DNA of 64,000 bases. Origin: Paraphysomonas bandaiensis (taxonomy: Eukaryota > Protista > Chrysophyceae). The notes under the pieces were generated by a model. That model worked only from the letters and a program-made list of their open reading frames with translations, was not told where the DNA came from and made no database searches. Position numbers and translations under genes: made by a program. Position 1 is the first letter of the stretch, and each line of letters starts with the position of its first letter. Shown here piece after piece: positions 36,408 to 64,000 of the stretch. Location: NCBI GenBank assembly GCA_965644295.1, contig CBFFRP010000297.1, positions 434,001 through 498,000 on the forward strand, given 5' to 3'.

Positions 36408-36598
36408 CGATGGTTTCTTTATAGAACCTTCTAATGGCCTATCAGTTACCGTGTTATCAATCTATGACTCGTCTATTAAAGTTCATCATAGTCCTAGACT
36501 CACATACAGCAGACACGTACATAGAGCAGACACCTGCACACTGACACGTGGACTACAGTACGTATATGCTGTATATGTATGTACAGCAGTGGTGCATG

Positions 36599-36600
<2 letters not shown>

Positions 36601-36630
<30 letters not shown>

Positions 36631-37460
36631 TGTATGTATGTATGTATGTATGTATGTATGTATGTATGTATGTATGTATGTATGTATGTATGTATGTATG
36701 TATGTATGTATGTATGTATGTATGTATGTATGTATGTATGTATGTATGTATGTATGTATGTATGTATGTATGTATGTATGTATGTATGTATGTATGTATG
36801 TATGTATGTATGTATGTATGTATGTATGTATGTATGTATGTATGTATGTATGTATGTATGTATGTATGTATGTATGTATGTATGTATGTATGTATGTATG
36901 TATGTATGTATGTATGTATGTATGTATGTATGTATGTATGTATGTATGTATGTATGTATGTATGTATGTATGTATGTATGTATGTATGTATGTATGTATG
37001 TATGTATGTATGTATGTATGTATGTATGTATGTATGTATGTATGTATGTATGTATGTATGTATGTATGTATGTATGTATGTATGTATGTATGTATGTATG
37101 TATGTATGTATGTATGTATGTATTTATGTATGTATGTATGTATGTATGTATGTATGTATGTATGTATGTATGTATGTATGTATGTATGTATGTATGTATG
37201 TATGTATGTATGTATGTATGTATGTATGTATGTGTGTATGTATGTATGTATGTATGTATGTATGTATGTATGTATGTATGTATGTATGTATGTATGTATG
37301 TATGTATGTATGTATGTATGTATGTATGTATGTATGTATGTATGTATGTATGTATGTATGTATGTATGTATGTATGTATGTATGTATGTATGTATGTATG
37401 TATGTATGTATGTATGTATGTATGTATGTATGTATGTATGTATGTATGTATGTATGTATG
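36601..37460. repeat. (TATG)n microsatellite, ~860 bp (~215 units)
   Basis: Near-perfect run with single-base variants near 37124 and 37234, followed by a short (TG)n. Confidence 0.99.
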
Positions 37461-37608
37461 TGTGTGTGTTGGATTATTTCGGGCGATATACAGTCATATA
37501 TACAATCAGAGACACAACGATAGCACCAACCCTACAACATAACTACATACTCTACCCTGTCCGTTCCGAAGGCCTAGGAGAGTTGTTTTATTAATCGGGT
37601 ACTCTATC

Positions 37609-40149: not shown

Positions 40150-41727
40150 TTAACAACGTTTCTGGCACAATGGACACAAGTTTTGCCTCTGCAACCATTT
40201 TCTGATGCAATTCGCATGAAAACTGTGATGCTTGTGACAAGGAAGAGAAATCAGCATCTCCCCCATATGAAACTCTGTGAGACATATCGAACATTCGTCG
40301 TTGAAAACCTCCTCTTTATTAGTATAGACAAAAGTAGGATATCGATCCAAATCAAATTTCGATAGGCCTCCCCGAATTCTTGCTGTCCCATCAAGAAAGC
40401 TCAGGAAGTACACCACAGCCACCACTGCTCGCAGGATAAACGAAACAAGATTCGTGGCACACATTCCTAGTAGTAAAGAGAGCAGCGGGTCGGAGGTTGT
40501 AGTGGTGATGTCCTTCACAATTACAGGCGATGAAGCCCACATGTAACCCTGACAGATAACAAGCACCACAAGCGCCATAACATCTAGCGTCGAGGCCAAT
40601 AAATGGTTTAGCATCCACGCATCAGATTGAACCATACTTTGAAGAGCCTGGGAGGCAGTATCTGCATCTAATGAGCGACATGCTTTCCAGCACTTGTAGT
40701 GTAGCAAAATACGCACAGGAGTAGCAATCATATTGAGCATAACCTGCAGTACCAACAAGCCAACAACCACATACTGAAACAAAAAGACCGACAGAGTCAC
40801 CTCCTTAAAAAGGAAGAGCGGTGGAAGAAATATTAAACTGTACGTATGAAATAAAGCACCATTCATGCCTGCTGAGAGCATCCCTCTCAGATATATACCC
40901 GAGGAAAAGGGCTGCCCTTGCAGCGTGTAGAAGAGCTCATTGTCTTCAAGTTGGCCCCTAGTTCTCATATCCGACAAGAAATGGCCAATTCTGATTGTAA
41001 TCCTTTCTCTCCAACATGTAAGGCTCGAGGCATTGGAGACGTGTGTGACATTGTGCACTGAATCTGTCTCATCGCTAGGATTACTATCTAGTCGTGAGTC
41101 ACCGCCACAAATTTGCTGGAAACTTCTCAGCGAGACAGTTCGGCGGAATGGCAGATCTGAAAACATAACGGTGGTTGGCTCCATATGAGCTGATAATTGA
41201 GCTATGACCGATGGATTTATCAAATTATTTAGCTCAACTTCCTTGAGAGGGACCTTAGACTTCGAACTCAACCCAAACACAAAGTCAAGGGCACTCGTTA
41301 TCTCAGATGAAACGCTGGTCTCCGGGCTCCGCTTCTTCCTCTTTAATTTGATTGATGAAGCAGTAGACGGGAGTTTAATATGGCGCTCAGAGTAATAATG
41401 TCCATATTTACGTGAGGGTACATACTTCAGCTGAACGTCCTGATGACCACTCGTCTCTTCCAGGTTCATACGATGAGTGGTATTTCCTGCAGCCCAGCGA
41501 ACGATACGCACCCACAGTGACGGCCTCCTCTGCGCTCCTCTCTTATGAGCAGACACTGATAGATCACTAATACCATACTCACTGCAGCTGCGCATAGATG
41601 AGAGGGGATGAGCCACCTCATCAACTCGATCGAAACTCAGAGGCTGCATCACAGATACAGTGGAGCACGACCTGTCTGTGTCCAGTGCACCGCCTCGATG
41701 ATAGTCATATGACCCCTTGAAATGCAT
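40150..41727 (-). CDS. Multi-pass membrane RING-H2 E3 ubiquitin ligase
   Basis: C-terminal CSICLTEF..LPC..HHSFHANCIRKWL....CPLC (C3H2C3), preceded by about four TM helices and RGGLSKFDL. Confidence 0.9.
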   Translation of the reverse strand: MHFKGSYDYHRGGALDTDRSCSTVSVMQPLSFDRVDEVAHPLSSMRSCSEYGISDLSVSAHKRGAQRRPSLWVRIVRWAAGNTTHRMNLEETSGHQDVQLKYVPSRKYGHYYSERHIKLPSTASSIKLKRKKRSPETSVSSEITSALDFVFGLSSKSKVPLKEVELNNLINPSVIAQLSAHMEPTTVMFSDLPFRRTVSLRSFQQICGGDSRLDSNPSDETDSVHNVTHVSNASSLTCWRERITIRIGHFLSDMRTRGQLEDNELFYTLQGQPFSSGIYLRGMLSAGMNGALFHTYSLIFLPPLFLFKEVTLSVFLFQYVVVGLLVLQVMLNMIATPVRILLHYKCWKACRSLDADTASQALQSMVQSDAWMLNHLLASTLDVMALVVLVICQGYMWASSPVIVKDITTTTSDPLLSLLLGMCATNLVSFILRAVVAVVYFLSFLDGTARIRGGLSKFDLDRYPTFVYTNKEEVFNDECSICLTEFHMGEMLISLPCHKHHSFHANCIRKWLQRQNLCPLCQKRC

Positions 41728-42200: not shown

Positions 42201-43649
42201 ATGCACCGACATTTGTATGCTTTAACGGTGTTGCTTCTGATTGAGTTATTAGTCTCCCATAACACTCAGCAGCAGCAGCAGTGCAGTGAGTCGGCTCTCT
42301 CTCTCTTTCACAGTCTCTCTTGTACGGACGGTCTCATAGGATATGGCCCTACATGCGAGTGTGTACAAGAAGAGTGTCGAGTTGCTCATATGCGATCTTA
42401 TCTTCCTTCTCCCTCAGCCTTTAAAGCCATTGATAGAAACCAGACGCTTCGAGAGTGCGACTCGCAGCTGATGCACGCTCTCACTAAGACAATTAAAACT
42501 TGGCCTAAAGTGATTACTGGGAAAGGATATCCTCTCCATATTAGAAGCGAAACATGCTCGCTGCAAGAAAACATAGCATCTCTTCTTGGAACCAGACGTT
42601 ACCACCCTTGTTCCGTTTCCATTGGAAAGTTTTTACGCTACAACTCACTGTACCTGTACTCTAGGCTCATAAGCAATCACACTCTTCTCAATATAGCGTA
42701 TCCTTTTGAGTGGAGATGGGCGCAAGGTGTGGATTCGTGTCAAAAAAGTACTTTTCGGGGATGGAATTGTGTGTTTGAAAGCGTCACTACATTGGGAATC
42801 AGTGAAGGTGCTACGCCACTCTCACCTCGTATACCTCCCATTGTTTTGAGCGCTGTAAAATCCCTACTATTTAATAAAAAGAATCATGCAGTGCAAATTA
42901 TATTCTACGGTCGAATGTTGGGTATACTTGCCCAACCAAGTACGTTGATAAAATCCTTCATGGCGGAGAATATGGTGACACAATCGCCTTTGTCGTCGTC
43001 AAACAACAATATTGTTAGTGTAAGCATGCATGTACGACAAGGGGACTCCTGTGATGTTGTAGTCAACTCCAAATATGATCTGGACTCATATGCAGAGAGG
43101 GGGTACAAGCGGACTTGTTTTCACTTGGATGTGTATATATCTAAGCTACATCAGCTCAGAGAGATGTATGGTGTAAATCGAGTGTACCTGGCAACTGATT
43201 CCCACGATATGATCATTCGTACAGAAGCTGAGCCTTCATTTGAGTGGGTATATATTAATACTAGTCGGGAAGTGTTTAAATATGCAAATGGATGGGTTGA
43301 TTATTTTAGCAATGGCCGCAATGAACTTGTTACTTTAAGCGCTGCAGCTGACCTTCAACTCATGCAGAGAGGTGATATTTTTGTCGGGGCCTTTTCTAGT
43401 CACTTTTCAAAGTTGTCCTTTTATCTCATGGCCGGTGCTAGAATGCGAATTCCCCCTTTTATCTCTCTGGATCACCCTCTCAGTTGTGATACAGTTGACA
43501 GCTGTTCTGAGAGTGATATTGCAAGTAGAATTGCAACCATTGAGGATATCATAAAGTGGGCACCAGAGTGTGTGCGGAAGTCGGGAGGAGGGTGGATTGA
43601 AGAATACCACGACCCGTGTGGGATATATGGAGGTCATGATATTGATTAG
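42201..43649 (+). CDS. Alpha-1,6-fucosyltransferase-like glycosyltransferase (GT23/FUT8-like)
   Basis: Signal/anchor at the N-terminus; GDP-fucose motifs VSMHVRQGD, VYLATD and DLQLMQRGDIFVGAFSSHFSKL. Confidence 0.78.
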   Translation: MHRHLYALTVLLLIELLVSHNTQQQQQCSESALSLFHSLSCTDGLIGYGPTCECVQEECRVAHMRSYLPSPSAFKAIDRNQTLRECDSQLMHALTKTIKTWPKVITGKGYPLHIRSETCSLQENIASLLGTRRYHPCSVSIGKFLRYNSLYLYSRLISNHTLLNIAYPFEWRWAQGVDSCQKSTFRGWNCVFESVTTLGISEGATPLSPRIPPIVLSAVKSLLFNKKNHAVQIIFYGRMLGILAQPSTLIKSFMAENMVTQSPLSSSNNNIVSVSMHVRQGDSCDVVVNSKYDLDSYAERGYKRTCFHLDVYISKLHQLREMYGVNRVYLATDSHDMIIRTEAEPSFEWVYINTSREVFKYANGWVDYFSNGRNELVTLSAAADLQLMQRGDIFVGAFSSHFSKLSFYLMAGARMRIPPFISLDHPLSCDTVDSCSESDIASRIATIEDIIKWAPECVRKSGGGWIEEYHDPCGIYGGHDID

Positions 43650-48675: not shown

Positions 48676-51600
48676 TCACTCATCGATAGGACAATTCTTC
48701 AGCTGTTCCTTCAATTGAGCAACCTTTTCCTTAAGTAATTTAATGTCAGCTAACAACGTCTCCATCTTGGTATCGTAATTCCTATATGTTTCTGCAGAAC
48801 CTCCAGTTCGATCATCCAGATCACGAATTGCCTCGATCAAAACAGGTATAAGCTCTATGTATTTGACTCCCAGGTATCGGCCATTGTGGGTACTCGTCAC
48901 TACACTCGGCAATACTGCCTGTACCTCTTGGGCTATCACACCAAGGTGGTTACTATTCGTATCATCGCTCATGATAGTGTCTTTCGCCCACTTATAATAT
49001 ACCCCCCTTACCTTCGAAATTTTACCAAGAGAGTCTTCAATAGGCATGATATCCGACTTCAGTCGTCGATCTGAGGGAACAGTGGGACTCTCTTTGAACC
49101 ATATATTGCCGTACACAGTTAGACCATTTGTTATGTACACGCCACCGCTCAAAACAGAAAGGCCTTCTTTAATCTTCATTCCATCGTTGTTAACAGTTAC
49201 ACCGCCAGTTACATACACACCGTTGTCATACACAGTCAACCCATCAGACACTCTCAGGCCACCTGCGTTAATGGATGCACCGCTATTTCGTACATACAAC
49301 CCAGTATTTTCAACAGTCAAGCCACCAGTCACTTCAATCCCTCCAGTTTCAACAGATATGCCATTCGTAATCACTGCGCCGCCAATTACTGATAAACCAC
49401 CAGTGACCCCCATTCCTCCTGTCAATATGGTTATACCTCCAGCCTCGACAACGAGACCTTCAGAGTCGATAGTTACACCTCCAGCGTCTACGAACATGCC
49501 ACCATTGGTAACTGTCAAACCGGACTCCACAGTGATACCAGAGAGAGAGTTTATGCCACCTGTGTATACTGTCACACCGCCAGTCACACGAGCTCCGCCC
49601 TGGTGTATAGATACTCCTCCGGTCAATTGCATTCCTCCTGTTTGGACACTGACTCCACCAGTTACCTTAAGTCCACTGGTACTCACAGTAATGCCACCTA
49701 GCGACTTCAATCCACTGCTTAAGACAGACAAACCGTCTGTAACATACATTCCTCCGTTTAATACAGATATACCCGCCGTGACTTTTATACCCACGTCATT
49801 GATGGTCAGACCACCAGTAATTACAGCACCACTATTGTATACGGTTAATGCGTTAGACACTCTCAAACCACCAGCATTAACTGACATGCCACCTGCGTTG
49901 ACATTTAGTCCACTATTATACACGGTCAAGCCTTGGGATATGCGGATCCCTCCAGTGTTGACTGATATCCCACCAGTTACGACCATTCCATCGACAACAG
50001 ACATTCCTCCAGAAGTTTTAAGACCACCAGAGAAAATGGTACTTCCGCCAGTAATCCTTAACCCGCCCAATTGGATAGTTAATCCATCGGCACCGACGAA
50101 CATACCGCCAGTACTAACTGTGGCACCGTCTGCCACAGTCATTCCACCGAGAGCTTGCAGCGAACCACTGTATACTGTCATTCCTCCTGTAACGCGCATA
50201 CCACCATCAATCGCACTAACACCTCCACGAAGCATCAGACCTCCACTCGCTACGGTTAAACCACCTGTGACTTTGAACCCAGAAGTGCTTACTGTTACGC
50301 CACCCACAGCTTTGAGTCCATCATTGCCGAGAGTTAATCCACCAGCTAGGACCTGTACACCACCAGCGCTTACTGTCAGACCCGTGTTTTCTATGGTCAT
50401 GCCTCCAGAAACTACTGCTCCGCTGCTTGTAAGTGATAATCCACCAGAGACTACAAATCCACCAGATAACACAGTAGCACCACCTTCAACTTTAAATCCA
50501 TCAGCGTTGATCGTAGCCCCCTTGGACTTGACATATAAGCCACCAGAGTTGACGGTTACTCCTCCAGTTACGACAAATCCCCCGGTGCGTATGGTTGCAC
50601 CCCCAGTAACGGTGAGTCCACTGCTGGTTATAGAGGCTCCGCCAGAAACTTTCAAGCCATGCGCATCGAGAGTTAACCCATGGGACTTGATAAATACACC
50701 TCCCTCAACGACAGTCATTCCTAACTCCACAGTGCCATAATTTTTTGCATAAAAATTACCACCTGCAATTGTGAGACCACCGGTTACTTTCATACCGTTA
50801 TCCATTACAGTCAGCCCCCCACTAACTCGCGCACCAGAGTCGTACACAGTGAGACCACCTGAGATGTGAGCACCATTGGCCGAGACAGTTAAACCACCGG
50901 CAGTGACTTCCAGGCCATCTTGGGAAATAGTTTGACCGCCTGCTGTAACAACTACGCCTGCTGTTGACACAGTCAGGCCTGCGGCTGCAGTAACAGCACC
51001 CGTAAGCGATGTCGTACCACCAATCTGAGCACCACCAGCTGTAGTTATACCACCAAGTACATTCAAACCGCCGCTCTGTACACTCATACCACCAGTAACG
51101 CGAGACCCGCCTTCATAGACAGAGAGTCCACCTGTAACTCTCATTCCCCCCGTGTTAATACTTGATCCACCATCTACGTACAACCCTCCAGAACCAGCTG
51201 TCACACCACCCGTAATAAGCACTCCATTAACAACGTTCGCAAATCCATTAACGTAGACACCGCTGTTGTATAGAGAAACACCACCTGTAAGTCTCATGCC
51301 ACCCGCTTTGACGGTTAAACCACCAGCTTGAACATGTAGACCTCCACTGGAAACAGTAGCTCCACCAGCTACCTTTAATCCATCAGAAGCAATTGATGTG
51401 CCACCATCGGATACCACAAATCCGCCGTCAACTGTGCCACCACCAGTAACTGTCACACCGTGCGCTTTCACCGACAGGCCACCAGCAGTAACATACACAC
51501 CACCAGATCCCACTGTTCCACCACCTGTGACATAGAACCCATCGGTGACAACTGAAATACCACCAGTAGCTTGCAAGCCGCCTGAAAATATTGTCGTTCC

Positions 51601-54600
51601 AGCGGTTACTTTCACCCCTCCACCTGCAACACTGAGACCATTGGCAGTTACCACTAAACCTCCTTGTACAATTGTAGCTCCCCCAGTGACTTTAACACCT
51701 GCTGTCCACACAGTCGCACCACCAGTTACAGTTAATCCATTAAGTGCTATCGATGCACCACCAGAGCTTACTACCATGCCACCACTGTCAATCGTGAGAC
51801 TCCCTGTAACCTTCATTCCTCCACTACTGACAGTTGCACCACCAGTTACCTTTATACCATCTGCACTGACAGTTGCTCCATTGGCAGAAATTACTAGACC
51901 TGCGTCGTTTACAGTCAGTCCACCTGTAAAGCTTCCACCGCCGGTGTATACGCTTGCACCGCCTGTCGCTCTCAAGCCAGAATTAAAAACAGAGATACCC
52001 TGTGAGACTTGTAGTCCACCAGATGTAATTTTAGATGCGCCAGCAACCACAACACCAGAATCAAGTACTGTGACACCGCCAGATACTTTTACTCCTGATG
52101 CTGTGATTGTTAGGCCAGCCTTTGACAATACACCGGCACTATTAATGGTGAGACCTCCTGTTCCCACGATGCCTCCGAATGTGGTCAACCCACCAGCTGT
52201 GACATACACACCACCAGTAGACACAGTCACACCGTCAGCTACTTTCAAGCCATTCGAAGCTACGGACAGTCCACCTTCCACGACCCCACCTCCTGAAAAT
52301 ACCGTGTGACCACCAGTAACACCCATACCGCCCACCCGCACTGATACTCCACCTGTAACTGTCAGGCCACTTGACATAACAGAGTGCCCCCCCGTAACTT
52401 TCATTCCTGAAAGAGCGACAGTCGCTCCTCCAGTAGCTGTTATCCCCCCACTATCAACAGTAACTCCTCCAGTCACTCGAAAGCCATCAGCAAAAATTGT
52501 TAAACCCTTCGTCGTAACTTCAGCACCTAGGCTAGCTGTAAAAATAGCAGACGAAACGAGCGCGGCACCGGACACAGTAGCACCACCAGCGACTTTCATG
52601 CCCCCTGCCGAAACAGAAGCACCATCTTTGACAATAACTAGTCCCCCACTCATCACGCTCGCACCTCCAGTAACTCGCATACCATTCATCAGAACAGAGA
52701 GTCCCGAGGTACGAACCAAAAGTCCGCCTGTCCATATGGAGGTACCACCTGTGACCTGTAAACCACCACTTTGTACAGTAAATCCACTAGTTACTTTCAC
52801 CCCTCCACCTGCAACACTGAGACCATTGGCAGTTACCACTAAACCTCCTTGTACAATTGTAGCTCCCCCAGTGACTTTAACACCTGCTGTCCACACAGTC
52901 GCACCACCAGTTACAGTTAATCCATTAAGTGCTATCGATGCACCACCAGAGCTTACTACCATGCCACCACTGTCAACCGTGAGACTACCAGCAACCTTCA
53001 TCCCTCCACTACTGACAGTTGCACCACCCGCAGCTTTAAGACCCCCAGTAGAAACAGTCATCCCATTCTTCTGAATTACGAGACCCCCATCTCCTATCGT
53101 CGCACCACCAGTCAATTTCATTCCTCCAGTCACAATTGTCAAACCGGTGTTGGCCAGAACCACACCTGCATCTACAGTAGCACCTCCAGTTGCGACCAAG
53201 CCATTTGCTTGAACAGATAACCCCCCTGCGGTAACATACACACCACCTGAACTGACGGTGGTGCCTCCTACGACAGTGAGTCCGCTTGAGGTTATAGTTC
53301 CGCCACCAGAAGCAGAAACACCACCAGCTGTCACCACAATACCGTGATTTCCAACAGTTACACCACCAGTAACAACCATGAGACCAGCATTGATAGTCCC
53401 TTTATGTCGGACAAATAAACCACCTGATTGAACTGTGGCACCACCAGTTACAGATAGTCCCCCAGTGACAACAGATACACCATCAGTAACTTTCAATCCT
53501 CCAGACTGTAAAGACGACCCACCAACTACTTTCAAGCCTTCAGAAAACACGGTCGCTCCACCTTTGACAAGAAACCCTGCAGCCTCAGCAGTCAGACCAC
53601 CAGCGAGAACAAACAAACCGCCTGTGGTTACAGTCTCACCACCCTGTATAGCAACACCGCCGCTATTCACTGTTGCGCCAGCTGTAACAACCATTCCAGA
53701 CGCATGCACAGTCAGGCCGCTCGCAGCAATTGACATTCCATTGTTGAACACTCCGCCACCAGATACCGTGGTACCACCAGTTACAACCACACCACCTGTA
53801 ACCTTCAAACCTCCAGACATAATACTTGCACCCCCTGTAACTTTTATTCCATTGGCATTGACAGACCCCCCACCCTTTGTAACATAGATACCAATATCAT
53901 CGACGGTGAGCCCACCGGTAACTGTCATACCATTATCATAGACCGTCAATCCGTCTGAGACTTGAAGCCCTCCACCATTAACTACAACACCACCAGCTTT
54001 AACAGTGACTCCGCCATTTACAGTGGCCCCGCCTGTGACGTAAAGGCCATTAGCTTTCACGGATACACCCCCAGCACGAACATAGACACCTCCAGTAGAT
54101 ACAGTGACACCACCTGTGACAGCCATTCCAGCTTGAGACTCTAAGCGATTACTCAGTGTGGTTCCTGTTACAGTTGCATCACCAACAATGTGAACACCAA
54201 CATTGAGCACGCTAATACCACCAGTAACCTTCAAACCACCTGACGAAATAGTGGATCCACCAGTTACAACAGTACCACCTGCAACACTGAGACCATTGGC
54301 AGTTACCACTAAACCTCCTTGTACAATTGTAGCTCCCCCAGTGACTTTAACACCTGCTGTCCACACAGTCGCACCGCCAGTTACAGTTAGTCCATTAAGT
54401 GCTATCGATGCACCACCAGAGCTTACTACCATGCCGCCACTGTCAACTGTGAGACTACCAGTAACCTTCATTCCTCCACTACTGACAGTTGCACCACCGG
54501 TTACTTTTACACCGGCCGCTGCAACACTTAACCCGGATTGTGATACATATATACCACCCGTGCTGACTGTTGTTCCACCGACAACTTTCATCCCATCATC

Positions 54601-57600
54601 TGAGACTGTCATTCCCTCGTCTGAGATGACAACTCCTCCGTCTACTGTCATACCACCCACAGCATTAATGCCACCCGTTGCAACTCGAAATCCCCCAGTG
54701 GCAACGTGAATACCACCTGTATATACTGTGACTCCACTAGTTACTTTCAACCCATCGTTACGAACAGACACTCCGCCAGTTATTTTCAACCCACTCTGAA
54801 AAATAGTAACTCCACCTGTAATGCCAGCCCCGTTGGTATTTACATTCAAAACCCCGGAATGTAACCATAGCCCAGTGTCCATCACTGTCAAGCCACCATT
54901 CGTGATATACTGACCACCAGTCAAAATAGTGCTCCCACCGGTAACCTTCAGTCCAGCGCTTGATATAGTCATACCACCGGCAACACTGGCCCCAGAAGAG
55001 AGGACTTGCAATTTGCCCTCCACCTTCATTCCACCCGTATGGATCGTGCCACCGCCTGTCACAGCAAACCCGCCAGCTCCAACAGATAATCCACCGGCAT
55101 TAACTTTGACTCCACCACTGACAACGGTGCCCCCACCAACGGATTTAAATCCATCACTGCTTATTGTCATGCCGTCATCGGATAGCACGACTCCACCGTC
55201 AACTGTGGCACCACCAGTAACTGTCATACCGCTTGCTTTCACTGACAGGCCACCAGCGGTAACATACACACCACCAGACCCCACTGTTCCACCGCCAGTG
55301 ATATACAATCCATCTCTCATAACAGATATTCCACCGGTAACTTTGAGCCCACCAGATGATATCGACTGACCACCGTTAACGACACGAACTCCTCCGTTTT
55401 GCACAGTTAGACCATCGACCTGGACCCACATTCCGCCAGTCATAACAGTGGAACCACCATAAATATTACTTCCTCCAGACCATATTGTTTGGCCACCAGT
55501 GACTGTCAAGCCGTTACCTGATATTGAAGCACCTCCAGTGGACACTAATAATCCACCGCTGTTTACCGTGACACCACCTGATACACGAAGCCCACCACTC
55601 ATTATAGTGGCTCCACCACCAAAGGTCGCACCATTAGCTTGGACGGTTAAACCACCGGCTTGAACATGTAGACCTCCACTGGAAACAGTAGCTCCACCAG
55701 CTACCTTTAATCCATCAGAAGCAATTGATGTGCCACCATCGGATACCACAAATCCGCCGTCAACTGTGCCACCACCAGTAACTGTCACACCGTGCGCTTT
55801 CACCGACAGGCCACCAGCAGTAACATACACACCACCAGATCCCACTGTTCCACCACCTGTGACATAGAACCCATCGGTGACAACTGAAATACCACCAGTA
55901 GCTTGCAAGCCGCCTGAAAATATTGTCGTTCCAGCGGTTACTTTCACCCCTCCACCTGCAACACTGAGACCATTGGCAGTTACCACTAAACCTCCTTGTA
56001 CAATTGTAGCTCCCCCAGTGACTTTAACACCTGCTGTCCACACAGTCGCACCACCAGTTACAGTTAATCCATTAAGTGCTATCGATGCACCACCAGAGCT
56101 TACTACCATGCCGCCACTGTCAATCGTGAGACTCCCTGTAACCTTCATTCCGCCACTGAATACAGTTGCTCCGCCAGTAGTTTTAATACCGCCAGATACG
56201 ACTGAGATCCCACCATTATTAACCACAAGGCCATCATTGTTAATCGTCTGACCACCAGCTGTAATGTACATACCACCAGTAGACACAGTCGCACCACCTG
56301 TAACGACAACACCCCCTCCAACAGTTCCGCCACCAGCCACTTTCATCCCAGTTGCTGACACAGTGAAACCACCGGCAGTTACAACTATCCCTCCATCCAC
56401 AACAGTTTGACCTGCTTTCACTTTAAAACCACCAGTCCACACAGTGCCACCTCCAGTGATTGCTAACCCACCAGATGACGCACTTATCCCGTTGGCTACC
56501 TTTAATCCACCTACAACACTCTGTCCTCCACTCGAAACAACTAAGCCCGAATCCGCCACAGTTGCACCATCAATAACATGCAGTCCTCCTTCTGTAACTG
56601 ATAGCCCTCCAGAAACTTTTAAACCTAGTGAGGTAATAGTGCCTCCCCCAACGACCTTGAAACCATTACTGTACACCGTGCCACCGCCAGTCACACCAAA
56701 TCCATGAGAACCTGTGGAAATTCCACCCGTTGTTACAACTACGCCCCCTTGAACCGTCAGCCCGGCGGCAGTCACATAAACTCCTCCTGTCGATACAGTA
56801 CCACCACCATTAACAACTAATCCGTCATCGTTCACAGTAACACCGCCAGTAGCCGCGAAACCACCAGACATTACACTAATTCCATCTGTGACGGTCATTC
56901 CCGTGGCTTCAACTGACAGTCCCCCAGCTGTAACTTTGAGGCCTTGTGTAAGCACGGTTATTCCATCTGAAACAGCCATGCCAATATCGTAAATAGATAT
57001 ACCAGCAGAAACCTGTACTCCTTGTAGCTTCGACACACCAGAAGAAACCACAATGCCTTGATTGTTCACAGTTATCCCCCCCTTCACCCAAACACCTCCA
57101 CTATCAACAGTTGTTCCACCAGTGACCTTCAAACCACCAGAAACGACACTCTCACCGTCATTTACTATTGATCCACCGGCTGAAACAGTGTGTCCGCCAG
57201 CGGTCACCACTAAACCTCCTTGTACAATTGTAGCTCCCCCAGTGACTTTAACACCTGCTGTCCACACAGTCGCACCACCAGTTACAGTTAATCCATTAAG
57301 TGCTATCGATGCACCACCAGAGCTTACTACCATGCCACCACTGTCAACTGTGAGACTACCAGCAACCTTCATCCCTCCACTACTGACAGTTGCACCACCC
57401 GCAGCTTTAAGACCCCCAGTAGAAACAGTCATCCCATTCTTCTGAATTACGAGACCCCCATCTCCTATCGTCGCACCACCAGTCAATTTCATTCCTCCAG
57501 TCACAATTGTCAAACCGGTGTTGGCCAGAACCACACCTGCATCCATCGTAGCACCTCCTGTAACAACAATTCCGGTTGCCTCCACAGAAAGACCGCCGCT

Positions 57601-60600
57601 TTTCACAACTAATCCCTCGTTTCCCACAGTAGCCCCACCAGTGACATACAAACCACCTGTCCGAATTGAAGTACCGCCAATTATTTTCATACCATCTGAA
57701 AACACGGATGTGCCGCCAGTGATATGCAAGCCATCACTAAGCAGTTGCACTCTGCCACTGCGAACAACGATACCACCACTCTGTATAGTAGCACCCTTAG
57801 TTACTTTTAAGCCTTCAGAAAACACGGTCGCTCCACCTTTGACAAGAAACCCTGCAGCCTCAGCAGTCAGACCACCAGCGAGAACAAACAAACCGCCTGT
57901 GGTTACAGTCTCGCCACCCTGTATAGCAACACCGCCGCTATTCACTGTTGCGCCAGCTGTAACAACCATTCCAGACGCATGCACAGTCAGGCCGCTCGCA
58001 GCAATTGACATTCCATTGTTGAACACTCCGCCACCAGATACCGTGGTACCACCAGTTACAACCACACCACCTGTAACCTTCAAACCTCCAGACATAATAC
58101 TTGCACCCCCTGTAACTTTTATTCCATTGGCATTGACAGACCCCCCACCCTTTGTAACATATATACCAATATCATCGACGGTGAGTCCTCCGGTGGTCTT
58201 CATACCAGAATCGTTTATAGTCAACCCAGTCGACACCTTGAGACCTCCATTTTGGATGGTGGCACCGTTCAGTTCTACAACCAAGCCATCATCTGCGATC
58301 GTAAGGCCGTGATCGGAAATGACAAACCCAACATCACTTACAGTAAATCCATCTACAACATGAAGGCCACCGGATAATATTGAAACACCACCGGTTATTT
58401 TCACTCCATCGGATGCGACAGTGGATCCACCACTTGTATACAAACCACCTGAGTCCACGGATATCCCACTTGTAACTTTCATACCACCACTATTTATTGT
58501 TGCACCGTCACTGGCCTTGAAGCCTTGAGCCAAAACACTCATTCCGCCCTGCTGTACAACTATCCCTGCGCTTCTCACTGTCGTACCTCCTGTTATTTTC
58601 ATCCCCCCGGAGGTAACTGTCAGACCAGTATTTTCCAGAACCATGCCAGAATCCACAGTGGTACCGCCAGTGACATACAGACCATCAGCAGCAATCGATG
58701 CACCTCCTGCGGTAACATGTAGGCCAGTGTTACCTACAGTGAGCCCACCATTTACGAGCATGCCAGTATCGTAAACTGTGACACCCCCAGTTACTCGAAA
58801 TCCAGTGCTCTGAATAGATACGCCACCAGCTGCAACCAACATTCCACCTGAGGTTACAGTGACCGCACCTTTAACTTTCATGCCGTCATTCTCAATGGAT
58901 ATACCGTGTGAGAGCGCAAAAATTCCACCTGAGAAGACAGTGACTCCACCAGTAACTTTCACTCCATCTGCAGCTACAGACAACCCTTTAGTTGTGACAT
59001 ATACACCTTCATTCATCAGTGTGAGTCCTCCAGTGACCTGCATACCACCACTGTTGACACTCACTCCTCCTGTGGCTTCCATTCCACCGCTATTGACACT
59101 CACACCACCCGATACTTTAACTCCTTGATCAAATATAGTGGCACCACCAAATACCAACATCCCGTCATCGTATACAGTAATTCCGTCAGACACTCGAAGC
59201 CCACCAGTTTCTATGGATATCGTATTGTATCCAACTAAGCCGCTATTTAGCGTCACTCCACCAGTTACCTTCATTCCTCCGTTCATGATTGTTGCACCAC
59301 CGGATGCTGCAAATCCGGCGGCACCAATGCTCAGACCATTTGCTGAAACATGAACACCACCTTGGAGCACAGTAAGGCCACCCGTAACTTTCACCCCTCC
59401 AGTGTACACTGACGCTCCACCCGTGACTGTGAGACCATCTTGTGCAATACTTATTCCCTTCGTAGTAACATATAATCCACCTCCTCTAAGGACGGTCATA
59501 CCCCCAGTGACTTTCATGCCACCAGTTACTACGGATATACCTTCTGTAACTTTTAGACCACCCGCATTTATCGAGAGTCCGCCAGAAACAATGCTTCCAT
59601 CCACAGCATTTAGGGCCCCCGATACAATGTATAATCCACCATCCCGTACAGTTACCCCGCCGTTAATATCGACACCAGAGTCATGAATGCGTGCACCGCC
59701 CAACAAAATTTCCAGGCCATCGTTGGCTATAGTAATACCATTAGTTCTAACATAAATACCTTCTGTATTAACACTTATGCCATCGGTAACCGTCAAACCA
59801 CTTGTTGCAATGGATACTCCTTCATACGCAACTATTCCTGTGTCTGCAGCAGTTATTCCACCAGTGACTTTCACGCCACCAAAATACACCGAGAGCCCTT
59901 GTGTAACGACAAAAACTCCACCAGAAGTCACAGTAGCACCACCTTTAACTTTGAAACCTGCTTCATCTATCGTCCCTCCACCGGTAACAACAACACCACC
60001 ACCTACAACTGACAGTCCACTATCCGTTTTAATGCCTGCTGTTGACACGGTAAGGCCGCCAGCATTAATATCCATGCCTGCAGACTCTATAGTAGCTCCC
60101 CCCGTTATAATCACACCGGCGTTCCGCACAGACAAACCACCCGTCACTTGGAAACCACCACTCGTTACTGCAGCACCGTTGTTTGCTACTAGCCGACCAG
60201 AATTCACAGTTAACCCGTCGGCTGATACGTACAACCCTCCAGTAGTAACAGTGGTGCCACCTGTTACTTTCAACCCTCCTGATTGTAGTGTTTTTCCGCC
60301 TGTAACTTTGAAGCCACCACTCATTATAGACGCCCCTGCTGTAACAACCACCCCTCCATCGACTACACTGATACCAGTAGCCGCCACAACTATTCCGCCG
60401 GATGTAACAGTAATACCGTGCTGATCAACCAGCATCCCCCCAGTCTGTAATCGCGTTCGTCCATTCACCGTCATACCGTTGTTGTTGACGCTGATTCCAT
60501 TAGTTACGGCAAGACCGTCGCTGACAACACTTATTCCTTCTGTGACCTTGAGTCCCCCTTTTGCAATGGTTCCACCACCAGTAACCACAATACCTGTGTC

Positions 60601-63600
60601 ACCAATGCTTAGACCGCCAGTGATAAGAGCACCATCGGTCGCGATGCTTAGACCGCCATTTTGTACGTAGAGACCACCAGAGCTCACCGTAACTCCCCCT
60701 GTTACTCCAATGCCACTAAGCATTACTACCTCGTCATTGAACACTGCGTTGTCATTTACTGTAATTCCACCAGTAATGGTAATTCCATCCGTCAGAATAG
60801 ATACACCACCGCGCTGAACGTAGATACCGCCTGTGCGAACAGTGGACCCTCCTGTCACAACCAGGCCTCCAGATTGAACAGATACGGTGCCGGTGACTTT
60901 GAGCCCACCAGAAAGTACAGTTGCACCAGCAGTTACTTTTACACCTTCACCTGAAATGGAGAGTCCTCCTGTGGTGATAAAAATACCCCCACTATTTACT
61001 GTTGCTCCATCGGTAACTGTTAGGCCAGATGCAACAATTGAAACTCCACCCTTGCTTACTACAAGCCCATGGTTAGATATTGTAACTCCATCTGTGGACA
61101 CTAAGACACCACCATAGTTAACAGAAAGTCCGCCATCAGCAATTCTTAAACCGACATTTCCCAATGTAACTCCGCCTGTCACATAGAGTCCGCCGGAAAG
61201 TAGGGAAGTGCCACCAGTAACTTTTACTCCTCCTGTAATGACTGATATACCACTTCTAATCTTGGCCCCATCAGAATCAACTGATAATCCGCCAGATAAA
61301 ACAAACATGCCACCTTTCAAAATCGTTGCACCCCCAGTGACTTTTAAACCTCCAGAGACTATGGATGCCCCGCCACTAATTTTCGTCCCCCCAGACAATA
61401 TAGACACACTACCCGTCACAGTCAAACCGTCAGCATGAATCATCGCCCCACCAGAATTTAGGCTGATGCCACCGGTTACAGCAAGGCCGCCGGAATTAAT
61501 AGAACTTCCACCTGTCACGGTGGTACCGTCGGCTATCACAGAGAGACCGCCAGACTTCACGTACAGCCCTCCTGTATTTATTGTATGTCCACCAGTCAGA
61601 GTGAGGCCTGAATTTTGAACAGATATTCCTGCAGTAACTGTAAGTCCGCCATTGTTAACAGTTGCTCCCCCTGTGAGTGTCACACCGCCCAAATTTACTG
61701 TGAGTCCTTTCGTAGTAACAACGATACCGCCGCTATTAATAGTGGCTCCCCCAGTCACTACCAAGCCCCCAGTAACCACAGATACACTACCAGTAACCTT
61801 CAAACCTCCGGTGAAAATGGATTGTCCACCGCTTAAATGCAGACCATCCAGCTGGATAGATACACCCCCGTCGGTGATTTTCAAACCATCATCGTGCAAT
61901 GTCAAACCACCTGTAATTCTCATTCCACCGGAGTTAACAGAAACGGCATTGGAAACTTTAAGGCCACCCGAATTAATAGTTATCCCTGCGGTCACTTTGA
62001 TTCCATGTAACGCAATTGTTAGTCCCTGTGAAACGACATGAATACCACCATCGTTCACAGTCAGTCCATTAGAGATTTTTAATCCACCAGAATTAATCGT
62101 CGTCCCTCCTGTAACTTCAATTCCTTCGGACATTACAGAAAGCCCTCCAGTCAGCGTAAGTCCGTCGTCTGCAATAGATACACCCTCAGTTCTAACATAC
62201 AGCCCACCGATATTCACCGTCGTTCCGCCCGTGACTGTAAGTCCGGCAGAGTTAACTGAAATGCCGCCTGTGGCTCTCATCCCGCCCGATTGCACAGTGA
62301 TCCCAGCAGTTACCTTCACGCCAGCAGCGAGAACTGAAATTCCACCAAGGTCTACTTTCATTCCTCCTGCCATGACTGTGGCACCCCCTGCCGTAAGACG
62401 AATTCCGCCAGCGGTCACATCCAGCCCATCTGTTTGGATGGTTACACCATTGGTAACATATATCCCTTCCGAGAGAACACTGAGACCAGCAGTTATTTTC
62501 ATCCCTTGACTGTTGATCGTTATACCATCTGTTACAACCATTCCACCAGACATCACCGTCGACCCCCCGGTGATCGTAATGCCCTGACTCATCACGGACA
62601 ATCCGGCGGAGAGCTTAAGCCCGCCGTCAACAGAAAGGCCTCCTTGTGCGATATTGAGGCCACCCTCGTACATATCCACGTTTCCACCGCCATCTAACTC
62701 AAAAATAGTATCTAGGTCATCAGTTATCTTAACAAAATTAAAAGTGGACGATGCTGGATTAGATGAAGAAAGGTGAAGCACATTTCCAGCAAATGTCGAG
62801 GATGTGGATTCAACGTATAAAATGTCGTACACATCTGAGTCGATAACTTGCAGGATACTATACGAGTCACAGTTGCTATTTTCAAAGTCTTGGAAGCAGC
62901 TACATACACCGGTGTCAAAGTTACACAGTCCTCTATTACTGCAGTACGCGTATTCTGTTATGAAAAGAATTACCGAAGAGATAACTAAAATATCTAGCGC
63001 GCAGAGAACTTACCTGGTATTGACCCAACAGCCACATCCTGAAGAGTACAAGTGGGAGTGGTACCTGACGTTACCTTGTCCACATCACACTGAAAAGACG
63101 TCAGCGCCGGGTTGCCATCATGAGTGTATATATTATTCTCCCATGGTTGAAGGGGGAACGATCTCAGCTCTACAGTGTACAGAGCACCAGAGAAGGCATT
63201 TACAGCACCACGGGTGCAGGTAACATCTTTCACATTTTTCAATCCCTCGAATGCCGCTTCACAGTCCGCACCGGTAAAGGTATTTGCATCTGCGTCGAAG
63301 TAAAAATACTCTCCATTGAAAGTAAACTTAAACTCCCCATCGAGCGAACCCGCTGAGGCAGATGTTTCAAAGGTTATAGTACGGTAGTCAGTGAATACTG
63401 TAAATGGATCGTCACCCTTTGGACACATGCCTGCAGCACAGTAAGTTAGAAAGCATATCTAAAACTATTATAATATCTTACGCATCGAACAATCCTGTCC
63501 GGTGTAGCCTGTATATAAATGATCAGAAGCAAATACGATGTAAGATGTTAACTATTACCCATATCACATATGCACCCAGTGACCTGCTTGCCGTCCCAAG

Positions 63601-64000
63601 CATTGTATTCACCATCATTTCCAAGAGTATAGAAATCGTAAATACGCTCAATCGTTAAGCATGTGCCATGATCTCCACAATTCTGTCCACATGACACTAG
63701 TTTGGGGGGGTGAAACAAGATTGCAACACATTACGTAGGGCTCACTTACTTCTTTCACAAGCAGCACCTTCAAAACCTTCCATACATTTGCACCGCCCCT
63801 TCACAATAAAAGGTAAGAAAAAGGTTTCAAGATTTGTCGGAAATACCGTTTGTCTGTCACATATCCCTTGATTTGAGCACTCTGTTAACGCATGGCCTAC
63901 ATCCTCTGCACTTGCTTTGTCTGCCCACGCAAATCCAGAAGGGCAAAATTCTATCAAGGAGTGCTGTCAATAACAAAAACAATAGCAACATATTTCACTT
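48676..64000 (-). CDS. Giant (>5000 aa) fibre protein: SIG1/OCM1 mastigoneme-type EGF domains + Gly/Val/Thr beta-repeat shaft + peptidase S74 intramolecular chaperone (5' end outside window)
   Basis: Short EGF exons 63957-63014 (CPSGFAWAD..GHALTECSNQGICDRQTG, WDGKQVTGCICDMGYTGQDCSMRMCPKGDDP). Intron 63013-62955, then one 14,279-bp exon starting EYAYCSNRGLCNFDTG and reading open through the repeats into PSDRRLK...LGVIAQEVQAVLPSVV...VKYIELIPVLIEAIRDL and a coiled coil. Confidence 0.9.

What the first reader, a model, noticed from the sequence alone, without database searches (positions are those of the whole stretch)
48676..64000. A eukaryotic 'phage tail fibre': mastigoneme-type EGF head fused to a ~4,550-aa beta-repeat shaft and a self-cleaving S74 chaperone
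Seen: spliced Cys-rich exons with CPxGxAWxD..H...ECSxxGxCDRxTG, WD....GCxCD and CPxGDDP motifs. They join in frame (59-bp intron 63013-62955) to a 14.3-kb exon of roughly 300 13-15-aa repeats (GLxVTGGxTVxSG; essentially no Pro or Cys) and a terminal SDRRLK...GVIAQEV domain. Established: those EGF motifs typify stramenopile tubular-mastigoneme/SIG1 proteins, and S74 domains fold trimeric beta-helical phage tailspikes/fibres and then cleave themselves off; the well-studied eukaryotic cases are MYRF/MrfA transcription factors. Inference: this is a secreted homotrimeric rod anchored by its EGF head in the flagellar hair, a candidate for the terminal or lateral filaments of tripartite hairs, or another surface fibre. 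At about 0.6 A/residue (T4 gp5-type triple beta-helix) the shaft would be roughly 0.25-0.3 um, the scale of such filaments; this is my estimate, not a measurement.
Basis: partly seen in the sequence, partly recalled or inferred. Interest (0 to 1): 0.95.

Follow-up and report, generated by a model that had tools for sequence, protein, structure and literature searches.

The report
Giant flagellar-hair fibre with phage chaperone
A real, expressed 5,061-residue secreted protein of a golden-alga-like flagellate joins a building block of the stiff flagellar hairs to a rod about 0.3 micrometres long that looks built like a phage tail fibre, with a self-removing end piece, which makes it a concrete candidate for the thin filaments on those hairs.

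Summary
A seven-exon gene on the minus strand starts 174 bases beyond the window and encodes 5,061 aa. It has a signal-peptide-like N-terminus, a Cys-rich EGF-type head, an unbroken 4,529-aa Gly/Val/Thr repeat and a C-terminal Peptidase_S74 domain (Pfam E 1.6e-17). The Ser-Lys motif is intact.

All six introns, including 63013-62955, are spliced out in transcript contigs from three studies.

The head is homologous to chains of a solved tubular mastigoneme (PDB 9ufe: OCM3, OCM5, OCM6). One of those chains ends where this protein continues into the rod.

A three-copy model of the last 319 aa scores 0.89 against 0.20 for the best control. Its inter-chain contacts are offset by one 6-7-residue strand, as in an intertwined triple beta-helix. 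That geometry gives about 0.33 um (my estimate).

It is not unique. Four paralogs in this genome and dozens of database proteins (622-2,701 aa; chrysophytes among the named ones) share head, rod and S74, and their heads form one clade. This gene and its paralog are the longest seen. The two differ by only seven one-residue indels at saturated dS.

Placement on flagellar hairs is untested. I found no paper describing the architecture. The scan had already noted a separate giant multi-S74 gene elsewhere in this genome.

The parts
63951..64000 (-). In-window part of intron 1 (full intron 64002-63951, 52 nt). Exon 1 (64174-64003: start codon, signal-like peptide, first EGF-like unit) lies just outside the window on the same contig.
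   Evidence: Sequence read. The joint L001 2450->2503 is spliced in transcript contigs. The CDS is assembled in frame.
63847..63950 (-). Exon 2: the CPxGxAWxD...ECSxxGxCDRxT motif of the head
   Evidence: Matches OCM3 of PDB 9ufe, E 5.9e-6. Flanking introns are spliced in RNA.
63750..63798 (-). Exon 3: end of the second EGF-like unit (GRCKCMEGFEGAACER)
63559..63696 (-). Exon 4: third Cys-rich unit with the WD...GCxCD motif
   Evidence: Conserved in homologues.
63482..63508 (-). Exon 5: a 27-nt micro-exon (YTGQDCSM)
   Evidence: Bridged on both sides by transcript contigs
63014..63430 (-). Exon 6: the CPKGDDP motif and a mixed alpha/beta domain of about 130 aa with 4 conserved Cys
   Evidence: Found at only four loci of this genome, each with an S74 hit downstream. 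AlphaFold2 model has mean pLDDT 84. No Pfam hit.
62955..63013 (-).
   Evidence: Skipped in contigs of X1, X2 and X3, with 255 letters on the shorter side
62665..62954 (-). Start of exon 7: last EGF-like unit (aa 303-335) and a 65-aa linker
   Evidence: The EGF unit matches 9ufe_BA residues 77-106 (20.7 bits) and 335-364 (16.6 bits), E 2e-5 for the whole chain. That 366-aa chain ends just after the 335-364 unit.
49078..62664 (-). Shaft: 4,529 aa (aa 400-4928), about 683 strand units of 6-7 aa (about 340 units of 13 aa, consensus GG-h-x-V-x-x-x-G-h-x-V-T)
   Evidence: Periodicity and composition. The last 180 aa are modelled as an intertwined trimer. Colinear with the paralog on C427. dN/dS 0.146.
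49057..49074 (-). Predicted self-cleavage motif S4930-D-R-R-L-K4935 (Ser-Lys pair), with cleavage expected before Ser4930
   Evidence: Aligned to the same motif in MYRF (7dc3) and a long tail fibre distal subunit (6f45). Ser with Lys five residues on (SDxRxK, with SDRNLK-type variants) is kept in at least 150 of 192 related sequences and in all 8 of the regex failures I inspected. 18 others lacked my anchor motif and 6 gave other readings, which I did not inspect.
48679..49074 (-). C-terminal 132 aa: Peptidase_S74 intramolecular chaperone domain (Pfam part 48898-49074) plus a helical tail. Predicted to be released after folding.
   Evidence: Pfam E 1.6e-17. PHROGs tail-fibre families match at the C-terminal ends of their profiles, best E 3.3e-24. 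PDB sequence matches are MYRF and tail fibres.
48676..48678 (-). Stop codon

Best explanation
This is an expressed nuclear gene of a chrysophyte-like flagellate. It encodes a secreted, rod-shaped homotrimer.

Inferred assembly, by analogy with phage tailspikes and fibres: the C-terminal S74 domain brings three chains together in the ER and starts the folding of the 4,529-aa repeat into an intertwined triple beta-helix. Each 6-7-residue unit forms one strand. At 4.8 A per strand the rod would be about 0.33 um long and a few nm thick. The domain then cuts itself off before Ser4930 through its Ser-Lys pair, releasing a 132-aa fragment.

The other end of the rod carries three copies of a Cys-rich head. 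This head is a paralog of the subunits that build the tubular shaft of stramenopile flagellar hairs.

Most likely role (inference): the heads dock into or onto the mastigoneme tubule and the rod projects as one of its thin terminal or lateral filaments. Paralogs of different shaft length would give filaments of different set lengths.

Shown here: gene structure, expression, domain homologies, family, and conservation of length. Modelled: the trimer and its strand register. Inferred: cleavage, rod length and location.
For: Gene and RNA: seven exons. All six introns are spliced out in transcript contigs of three studies, and one contig joins the head to the shaft.

Secretion: the N-terminus has a hydrophobic segment followed by TQA|A and 28 Cys in the head.

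S74: Pfam E 1.6e-17. Phage tail-fibre PHROGs match, with three (phrog_8215, phrog_18186, phrog_25788) extending into the last repeats. MYRF ICA (7dc3, E 2.5e-7) and a long tail fibre (6f45) are the only solved relatives by sequence, and the SDxRxK motif is aligned to them.

Trimer: ipSAE 0.89 in three runs against 0.20 for the best of three controls. Partner pLDDT 92, runs agree in at least 96% of contacts, 1,738 contacts. In the calibration 21 of 30 proteins solved as pairs of one chain reached the mark and 0 of 23 solved as single chains did; the calibration used two copies, not three. The best-defined inter-chain pairs join residue i to i-6 or i-7 (one strand unit), and the interface runs along the repeat, which has no solved sequence relative.

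Head: the head of homologue P0117 matches six 9ufe chains ('Tubular mastigoneme protein', OCM3, OCM5, OCM6), best E 5.4e-46. Our own exon 2 matches OCM3 and our last EGF unit matches 9ufe_BA, which ends at that point. Our head against P0117 gives E 1.3e-72.

Family: head exon 6 occurs at four loci, all with S74 downstream. At least 58 database proteins have head + S74, among them Chlorochromonas (Ochromonas) danica, Epipyxis and Dinobryon. All rod-bearing heads form one clade, SH-like support 100.

Selection: the paralog on C427 is colinear (4,758 against 4,759 aa, 68.5% identity, seven 1-aa indels). dS is 1.46 and dN/dS is 0.146 in the shaft.

Organism: the best named hits of the neighbouring Vps45 gene are Mallomonas and Ochromonas. 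IFT57 is present.
Against: - No localisation or proteomic data bear on this protein.
- None of the six chain types of the solved tubule (9ufe) has the repeat or S74. If the protein is on the hair it is not part of the solved shaft lattice.
- Named oomycete head-family proteins in the sampled length range have 2-3 tandem heads and no rod. Only partial Aphanomyces entries have a rod. The subfamily may therefore not be universal among organisms with tripartite hairs.
- The trimer is a model. Its calibration used two copies, and passes for eukaryotic proteins without an older solved relative were rare.
- The signal peptide was judged by eye only.
- Cleavage is inferred from motif conservation.
- The exact length rests on the assembly of a repetitive exon, although the independent paralog has the same length.
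- Tektin was not found in the genome. This is a weak point against a canonical flagellum.
Confidence: 0.6

Rival explanations
1. It is a trimeric S74-built extracellular fibre as described, but it works somewhere other than the flagellar hairs. Examples are a cell-surface coat, a tether for silica scales, a prey-capture or adhesion fibre, or thin non-tubular flagellar hairs. On this reading the EGF-type head is only a generic extracellular docking module shared with mastigoneme proteins.
For: The head family is large and diverse in stramenopiles, with many uncharacterised 'tenascin-like' paralogs. The solved tubule lacks any rod-bearing chain. The genome has at least 7 silicon-transporter loci, so the cell probably makes silica structures that need organic tethers. 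The same genome holds another giant S74 fibre gene with a different, PSI-like N-terminus, so S74 fibres here are not tied to one head.
Against: The head matches bona fide mastigoneme shaft chains over its whole length. The closest chain stops where the rod starts. The named organisms with the architecture are flagellates with hairs in the vegetative stage.
Confidence: 0.27
2. It is the fibre gene of an endogenous virus (polinton-like virus or giant virus) and not a cellular gene.
For: [quoted passage not shown] The nearest Atlas clusters for the C-terminus are viral.
Against: There are six spliceosomal introns, all confirmed in RNA. The head is a stramenopile cellular family. In the paralog on C357 the S74 domain itself is split by an intron. 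The neighbours are ordinary cellular genes (RING protein, Vps45) on a 1.07-Mb contig. The two paralogs are old and under purifying selection. The cited paper reports that S74 fibre genes are not found in polinton-like viruses of ochrophytes.
Confidence: 0.02
3. The repeat folds as a single-chain beta-solenoid, or stays partly disordered, and the S74 domain is a relic that neither trimerises nor cleaves.
For: There is a weak Pfam hit of a shaft segment to the haemagglutinin repeat of single-chain beta-helices, E 1.6e-4. The strongest period is 13 aa and not the 20 aa expected for three strands per turn of one chain in a three-sided helix. The trimer is only a prediction.
Against: The S74 domain matches the full profile and its Ser-Lys motif is kept throughout the family. 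dN/dS of the C-terminal part is 0.12. The three-copy model scores 0.89 against 0.20 for controls, with a dense interface along the repeat.
Confidence: 0.06
4. The extreme length is an assembly artefact: repeats were wrongly expanded or collapsed, and the true protein is of ordinary family size.
For: Internal segments of 250-540 nt are 87-98% identical. Such repeats can mislead assemblers. The other family members seen are 622-2,701 aa.
Against: A second locus on another contig has the same length to within one residue and the same internal repeat map, although it is only 68% identical. The frame is open over 14.3 kb. A transcript contig covers 4.8 kb of the shaft contiguously with the head.
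Confidence: 0.05

Closest known systems
Tubular mastigoneme proteins of stramenopiles (chains of PDB 9ufe named 'Tubular mastigoneme protein', OCM3, OCM5, OCM6; PnMas1-3 of Phytophthora; SIG1)
   Same: Signal peptide and the same Cys-rich EGF-type head module, with no transmembrane segment. Homology is shown by sequence: homologue head against 9ufe chains, E 5.4e-46 to 6.6e-31; our exon 2 and last EGF unit match directly. PnMas proteins are described as having a signal peptide, 3-4 EGF-like domains and no TM (PMC12223298).
   Different: The solved and published proteins are one, two or three head modules and nothing else (209-748 aa in 9ufe; oomycete relatives 590-1,060 aa). This protein has one head followed by a 4,529-aa beta-repeat and an S74 domain. 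I could not compare it with PnMas, Ocm1, Ocm2, Ocm4 or SIG1 sequences by name.
Phage tailspikes and tail fibres with a C-terminal intramolecular chaperone (Peptidase_S74: K1F endosialidase type, T5 L-shaped fibre type, T4-type long tail fibre distal subunit 6f45)
   Same: The S74 domain lies at the extreme C-terminus of a long beta-structured rod and has the SDxRxK motif. PHROGs tail-fibre profiles match at their own C-terminal ends, some reaching into the last repeats. The expected logic is the same: the N-terminus is attached to the particle or organelle, and the C-terminal chaperone nucleates the trimer and then leaves.
   Different: This is a cellular, intron-bearing eukaryotic gene routed through the secretory pathway. 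The N-terminus is an EGF-type head, not a virion adaptor. No enzymatic or receptor-binding domain is visible. The rod is several times longer than the tail-fibre profiles it matched, which are 343 to about 1,800 positions long, and is a single uniform repeat.
MYRF / MrfA membrane-bound transcription factors
   Same: They are the best-studied cellular eukaryotic use of the S74/ICA domain, preceded by a short triple beta-helix. MYRF is the closest solved sequence relative of our C-terminus (7dc3, E 2.5e-7; PMC8326128 and PMC3742443 listed).
   Different: In MYRF the domain releases a DNA-binding N-terminal trimer from the ER membrane and the helix is short. Here there is no DNA-binding or TM domain, and the helix is the product.
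S74-terminated fibre proteins of polinton-like viruses and giant viruses of protists
   Same: Large modular eukaryote-associated proteins (up to 3.9k aa) with a C-terminal S74 domain (PMC12220804).
   Different: Those are viral and have laminin-G, collagen, adenovirus-fibre or baseplate domains. The paper reports that they are absent from ochrophyte elements. This gene has introns, a host-specific head and cellular neighbours.
T4 gp5-type intertwined triple beta-helix
   Same: The modelled inter-chain contacts are offset by one short strand (i to i-6 or i-7), as expected when three chains wind around a common axis (the geometric reading is mine).
   Different: The repeat unit is 6-7 aa with a 13-aa super-period, not an 8-aa unit. 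No solved sequence relative of the shaft was found, and I obtained no coordinates to measure.

Membership tests
Peptidase_S74 / intramolecular chaperone auto-cleaving (ICA) domain | Sequence match to the family profile over its full length and above the curated threshold | tested here: met
   PF13884 E 1.6e-17, 64 bits (cut-off 22), profile 1-57 of 58. Ten hits in the genome.
Peptidase_S74 / intramolecular chaperone auto-cleaving (ICA) domain | Catalytic Ser with Lys five residues downstream at the start of the domain | tested here: met
   S4930-D-R-R-L-K4935 aligns with the corresponding motif of MYRF (7dc3) and of 6f45. Ser with Lys five residues on (SDxRxK, with SDRNLK-type variants) is kept in at least 150 of 192 relatives and in all 8 regex failures inspected.
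Peptidase_S74 / intramolecular chaperone auto-cleaving (ICA) domain | Position at the C-terminus of a trimeric beta-helical rod | tested here: met
   The domain forms the last 132 aa after the repeat. The three-copy model gives ipSAE 0.89 against 0.20 for the best control, partner pLDDT 92 and at least 96% contact agreement between runs. The calibration (21 of 30 pairs of one chain, 0 of 23 single chains) used two copies. This is a prediction only.
Peptidase_S74 / intramolecular chaperone auto-cleaving (ICA) domain | Actual self-cleavage and release of the domain after folding | not testable with these tools
   Needs protein work: expression of a C-terminal fragment with Ser and Lys mutants.
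Stramenopile tubular mastigoneme (OCM / PnMas / SIG1) protein family | Homology of the Cys-rich EGF-type module to proteins solved in the mastigoneme tubule | tested here: met
   P0117 head against 9ufe chains, E 5.4e-46 to 6.6e-31. Our head against P0117, E 1.3e-72. Our exon 2 against OCM3, E 5.9e-6. Our last EGF unit against 9ufe_BA, E 2e-5. Exon 6 alone gave no PDB sequence hit.
Stramenopile tubular mastigoneme (OCM / PnMas / SIG1) protein family | Signal peptide and no transmembrane segment | tested here: inconclusive
   The N-terminal M-D-K, hydrophobic stretch and TQA|A are seen by eye. No signal-peptide predictor was available. No long hydrophobic stretch was noticed elsewhere in the protein.
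Stramenopile tubular mastigoneme (OCM / PnMas / SIG1) protein family | Architecture made only of head modules (one to three), as in the solved and published members | tested here: not met
   One head plus a 4,529-aa repeat plus S74. The rod-bearing proteins form their own clade within the head family. I therefore file it as a distinct subfamily and not as an OCM-type shaft subunit.
Stramenopile tubular mastigoneme (OCM / PnMas / SIG1) protein family | Physical presence on the flagellar hair | not testable with these tools
   Needs immuno-EM or proteomics of isolated mastigonemes.
Intertwined triple beta-helix fibres (T4 gp5 type) | Three chains each contributing every third strand to each face, so neighbouring strands come from different chains with a one-strand offset | tested here: inconclusive
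   The listed best contacts pair residue i of one copy with i-6 or i-7 of another along residues 8-175. No coordinates were returned, so pitch and handedness were not measured.
Endogenous viral fibre gene | Viral gene neighbourhood and lack of host gene features | tested here: not met
   Six introns are confirmed in RNA. The neighbours are cellular. The head is host-specific.

The most novel reading that the evidence does not exclude
The head + triple-beta-helix + S74 subfamily makes up the molecularly unidentified terminal and/or lateral filaments of stramenopile tripartite flagellar hairs. On this reading a cellular eukaryotic lineage builds part of an organelle with phage tail-fibre assembly chemistry. 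Filament length would be written directly in the gene as a strand count: the two giant paralogs keep the same length to within one residue over about 4,760 aa, although synonymous sites are saturated. Paralogs of different shaft length (the C664 member, whose last exon is 1,306 aa, and the two 4,529-aa giants) would give filaments of different set sizes.
Probability: 0.4. Interest if true: 0.85.

Novelty: new variant of a known kind. Interest (0 to 1): 0.7.

Why it matters
Tripartite flagellar hairs define the stramenopiles and reverse the thrust of the flagellum. The subunits of the tubule are known and one tubule structure is solved. I found nothing on what the thin filaments at the tip and sides are made of.

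This gene family gives a concrete, testable candidate. It has a tubule-subunit module joined to a rod of fixed length.

It would also be a second, quite different cellular use of the phage S74 chaperone in eukaryotes, besides the MYRF transcription factors. Here it would make an extracellular structure, as it does in phages.

The near-perfect conservation of length between two old paralogs of a 4,500-residue repeat is unusual for repeat proteins. It points to selection on physical length, and gene conversion appears to keep parts of the repeat alike without changing the count.

The uniform, Cys-free, Pro-free 6-7-residue repeat could be a useful model for how very long triple beta-helices fold from one end.

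Tried and rejected
- Search for giant relatives: the S74 region with candidate lengths 2,617-8,326 aa gave only 5 weak, unrelated long proteins. The word filter is insensitive, so this is no proof that other giants are absent.
- Fold of the exon-6 domain: the AlphaFold2 model is good (pLDDT 84), but Foldseek against PDB gave nothing at E <= 0.001. That fold library ends on 2026-04-08 and did not return 9ufe, so the result is uninformative. Exon 6 alone also gave no PDB sequence hit.
- Literature: searches combining mastigoneme with Peptidase_S74, with endosialidase or with OCM5/OCM6 found nothing. A search with tail-fibre, tailspike and chaperone terms returned no mastigoneme paper among the 8 listed. 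The paper behind 9ufe is not in the library, so I cannot exclude that it already describes this subfamily.
- Matching oomycete hits to the published PnMas locus tags: the clusters I opened held other tags, so identity with PnMas1-3 is not shown.
- Diatom origin: I considered it because of the silicon transporters and dropped it. The best named hits of the neighbouring housekeeping gene are chrysophytes and synurophytes at 68-70%, with no diatom among the 120 listed hits.
- Viral origin: rejected (see rivals).
- Depletion of N-glycosylation sites in the shaft (one NxS/T): not used as evidence, because Asn sits at a fixed repeat position followed by x-Gly.
- 'Recent duplications lengthen the shaft': rejected. 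Both paralogs share the repeat map.
- Neighbouring ORF 42201-43649: only a sub-threshold FUT8-like hit.
- ESM Atlas look-up: it only repeated the S74 assignment.

Full report
WHAT IS THERE

The window is G000:C297:434001-498000, part of a 1.07-Mb contig of a 62.6-Mb genome. On the minus strand, 48676-62954 is one open frame of 4,758 codons with a single terminal stop.

Upstream of it lie five short Cys-rich exons.

I fetched the contig beyond the window end. The first exon is at window-equivalent 64174-64003. It holds an ATG, a hydrophobic signal-like segment ending TQA|A, and a first EGF-like unit. Joining the seven exons gives a 15,186-nt CDS and a 5,061-aa protein.

EXPRESSION AND SPLICING

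Three runs from three studies of one organism hold spliced contigs. All six introns (52, 48, 53, 50, 51 and 59 nt) are skipped exactly as predicted.

One 5.8-kb contig runs from about 74 nt upstream of the ATG, through all head exons, about 4.8 kb into the long exon. These are assembled contigs, so they say nothing about expression level or growth conditions.

THE THREE PARTS

(1) Head, aa 26-335, with 28 Cys.
- Pfam sees only weak EGF matches in our pieces. Full-length homologues give EGF_2, EGF_Teneurin and EGF_TEN.
- A copy of the PDB sequences holds entry 9ufe, whose chains are named 'Tubular mastigoneme protein', OCM3, OCM5 and OCM6. The head of homologue P0117 matches all six chain types (E 5.4e-46 to 6.6e-31). 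Our head matches P0117 at E 1.3e-72.
- Our own exon 2 matches OCM3 (E 5.9e-6).
- Our last EGF unit matches 9ufe_BA (E 2e-5). The 366-aa 9ufe_BA chain ends just after its last EGF unit, residues 335-364, which also aligns to ours.
- The head is therefore a mastigoneme-tubule subunit module, and this protein continues where those subunits stop.

(2) Shaft, aa 400-4928.
- It is 4,529 aa with 25% Gly, 15% Val, 12% Thr, one Pro and no Cys.
- Periods are 6-7 aa and 13 aa, and the periodicity is never interrupted.

(3) C-terminal 132 aa.
- Peptidase_S74 over the full profile.
- The SDRRLK motif aligns to MYRF and to a T4-type tail fibre.
- Phage tail-fibre PHROGs match at their own C-terminal ends.

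TRIMER

Three copies of the last 319 aa were modelled.
- Score: ipSAE 0.89 in all three runs against 0.20 for the best of three controls. Partner pLDDT is 92, and the runs agree in at least 96% of contacts.
- Calibration: the mark was reached by 21 of 30 proteins solved as pairs of one chain and by 0 of 23 solved as single chains. The calibration used two copies, and eukaryotic proteins without an older solved relative rarely passed.
- Interface: it runs along the repeat (residues 8-175), for which no solved sequence relative exists. The pass is therefore not just a memory of S74 trimers.
- Register: the best-defined pairs join residue i of one copy to i-6 or i-7 of another, which is one strand unit. 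That is what an intertwined triple beta-helix requires (my reading).
- Length: with 4.8 A per strand, about 683 strands give about 0.33 um. This is an estimate and not a measurement.

IT IS A FAMILY

In this genome:
- Head exon 6 is found at four loci, and each has an S74 hit downstream.
- C427 carries a second giant.
- C664 carries a member whose last exon is 1,306 aa.
- C357 carries a divergent member whose S74 domain is itself split by an intron.

In databases:
- An exhaustive profile-free search with the C-terminal 200 aa found 66 representatives at E < 1e-30. The best ones have a signal peptide, the same head, the same kind of repeat and S74.
- Named sources are chrysophytes: Chlorochromonas/Ochromonas danica (two genes), Epipyxis, Dinobryon and single-cell chrysophyte assemblies.
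- Head-family proteins of oomycetes, Tribonema, Triparma and Hondaea are two or three tandem heads with no rod.

Tree: on a FastTree of 152 heads, every rod-bearing protein falls in one clade (SH-like support 100). This clade also holds Dictyocha, Tetraparma, Chrysophaeum and partial Aphanomyces entries. The few 'rod-less' rows inside it are fragments. This suggests a single origin of the fusion. It rests on one quick tree with midpoint rooting.

Length: sampled members are 622-2,701 aa. The two genes here are about twice the longest.

LENGTH CONSERVATION

The C297 and C427 proteins align end to end. They are 4,758 and 4,759 aa in the last exon, 68.5% identical, with seven indels of one residue each. 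In the shaft, synonymous sites are saturated (dS 1.46) and dN/dS is 0.146.

Both genes carry the same map of internal repeats, with offsets of about 4,275-4,377, 2,655, 1,676 and 1,470 nt. Intragenic identity reaches 98%, far above the similarity between the two genes.

The simplest reading is that the segmental duplications are old and patches are kept alike by gene conversion within each gene, without any change in length. This contradicts the companion note that recent duplications are lengthening the shaft. It points to selection on the exact length or register of the rod.

WHOSE GENE

- The neighbouring Vps45 gene has its best named hits in Mallomonas (69-70%) and Ochromonas sp. CCMP1393 (68%). 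No diatom is among the 120 listed hits.
- The genome has several silicon transporters and IFT57. No tektin was found.
- The organism is therefore most likely a silica-forming chrysophyte-lineage flagellate whose vegetative cells carry hairs. Transcripts in ordinary cultures fit that picture.

WHAT IT MOST LIKELY DOES

The protein enters the ER. The S74 domain nucleates the trimer and is cut off, as in tailspikes and MYRF (PMC3742443 and PMC8326128, listed). The mature product is a thin rod with three mastigoneme-type heads at one end.

In phages the N-terminus is the attached end, and the chaperone leaves the distal end. By analogy the heads would dock on the tubule.

Ochromonas hairs carry one to three terminal filaments and lateral filaments of two sizes (abstract of PMC2108286). 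Paralogs with different shaft lengths fit that picture.

This last step is inference. The solved tubule contains no rod-bearing chain, and no localisation data exist.

RIVALS

- A fibre used elsewhere on the cell surface remains quite possible.
- A viral origin is contradicted by the introns, the head, the neighbours and the age of the paralogs, although S74-tipped fibres are common in protist viruses (PMC12220804).
- A monomeric solenoid and an assembly artefact are both unlikely.

NOVELTY

Both halves are known kinds. I found the fusion described in no paper of the library, although automatic Pfam labels show it in databases. The publication behind 9ufe could not be read.

I rate it a new variant of a known kind: a cellular, extracellular, organelle-associated use of the phage S74 fibre module, with an extreme and length-conserved member here.

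Noticed in passing
G000:C616:88948 to the contig end at 192858 (outside the window): A single open frame of more than 34,637 aa (Gly 23%, Ser 24%) contains five internal Peptidase_S74 domains, each followed directly by more repeat. The sequence around three of the S74 domains is nearly identical over the ~400 aa I compared. Cys-rich PSI-like exons sit just upstream (C616:88542-88966) and there is no EGF head. If each domain cleaves, one precursor would yield several fibres. Other first readers noted it too (s1-443456, s1-436726).
   Followed up: partly
window 51305-58072 and G000:C427 (same CDS offsets): Internal shaft segments of 250-540 nt are 87-98% identical within each gene, at the same offsets in both paralogs, while the paralogs are at dS about 1.5. 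The pattern fits intragenic gene conversion that preserves length, not recent duplication.
   Followed up: yes
G000:C357:48239-54519 (outside the window): A divergent fourth family member has a modified head motif (CPKAFD...), an irregular multi-exon rod without the GG-x-x-V repeat, and an S74 domain interrupted by an intron right after the SDRRFK...LRGV segment.
   Followed up: partly
G000:C641:5184-5363 (outside the window): A further S74 hit (58 bits) lies in a 2,466-aa open frame on a 12-kb contig. It may be a fragment of one of the giant fibre genes.
   Followed up: no
window 42201-43649 (+): A 482-aa ORF with a signal-like N-terminus has a sub-threshold match to the alpha-1,6-fucosyltransferase catalytic domain (E 0.0018, 17.6 bits against a cut-off of 27.6). 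It is a possible glycosyltransferase 5 kb from the fibre gene. No link is shown.
   Followed up: partly
window 40150-41727 (-): A multi-pass membrane protein with a C-terminal RING-H2 finger (zf-RING_2, E 2.1e-12). An ordinary cellular neighbour.
   Followed up: partly
window about 36550-37520: A long, nearly perfect 12-nt microsatellite, read as CMYV repeats in three frames. It coincides with a GC-skew spike (0.29) in the composition profile.
   Followed up: no
window 63014-63430 (exon 6): The 130-aa domain between the CPKGDDP motif and the last EGF unit gives a confident mixed alpha/beta model (pLDDT 84) with no significant Foldseek match in PDB up to April 2026 and no Pfam family. It is conserved across the whole mastigoneme head family.
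   Followed up: partly
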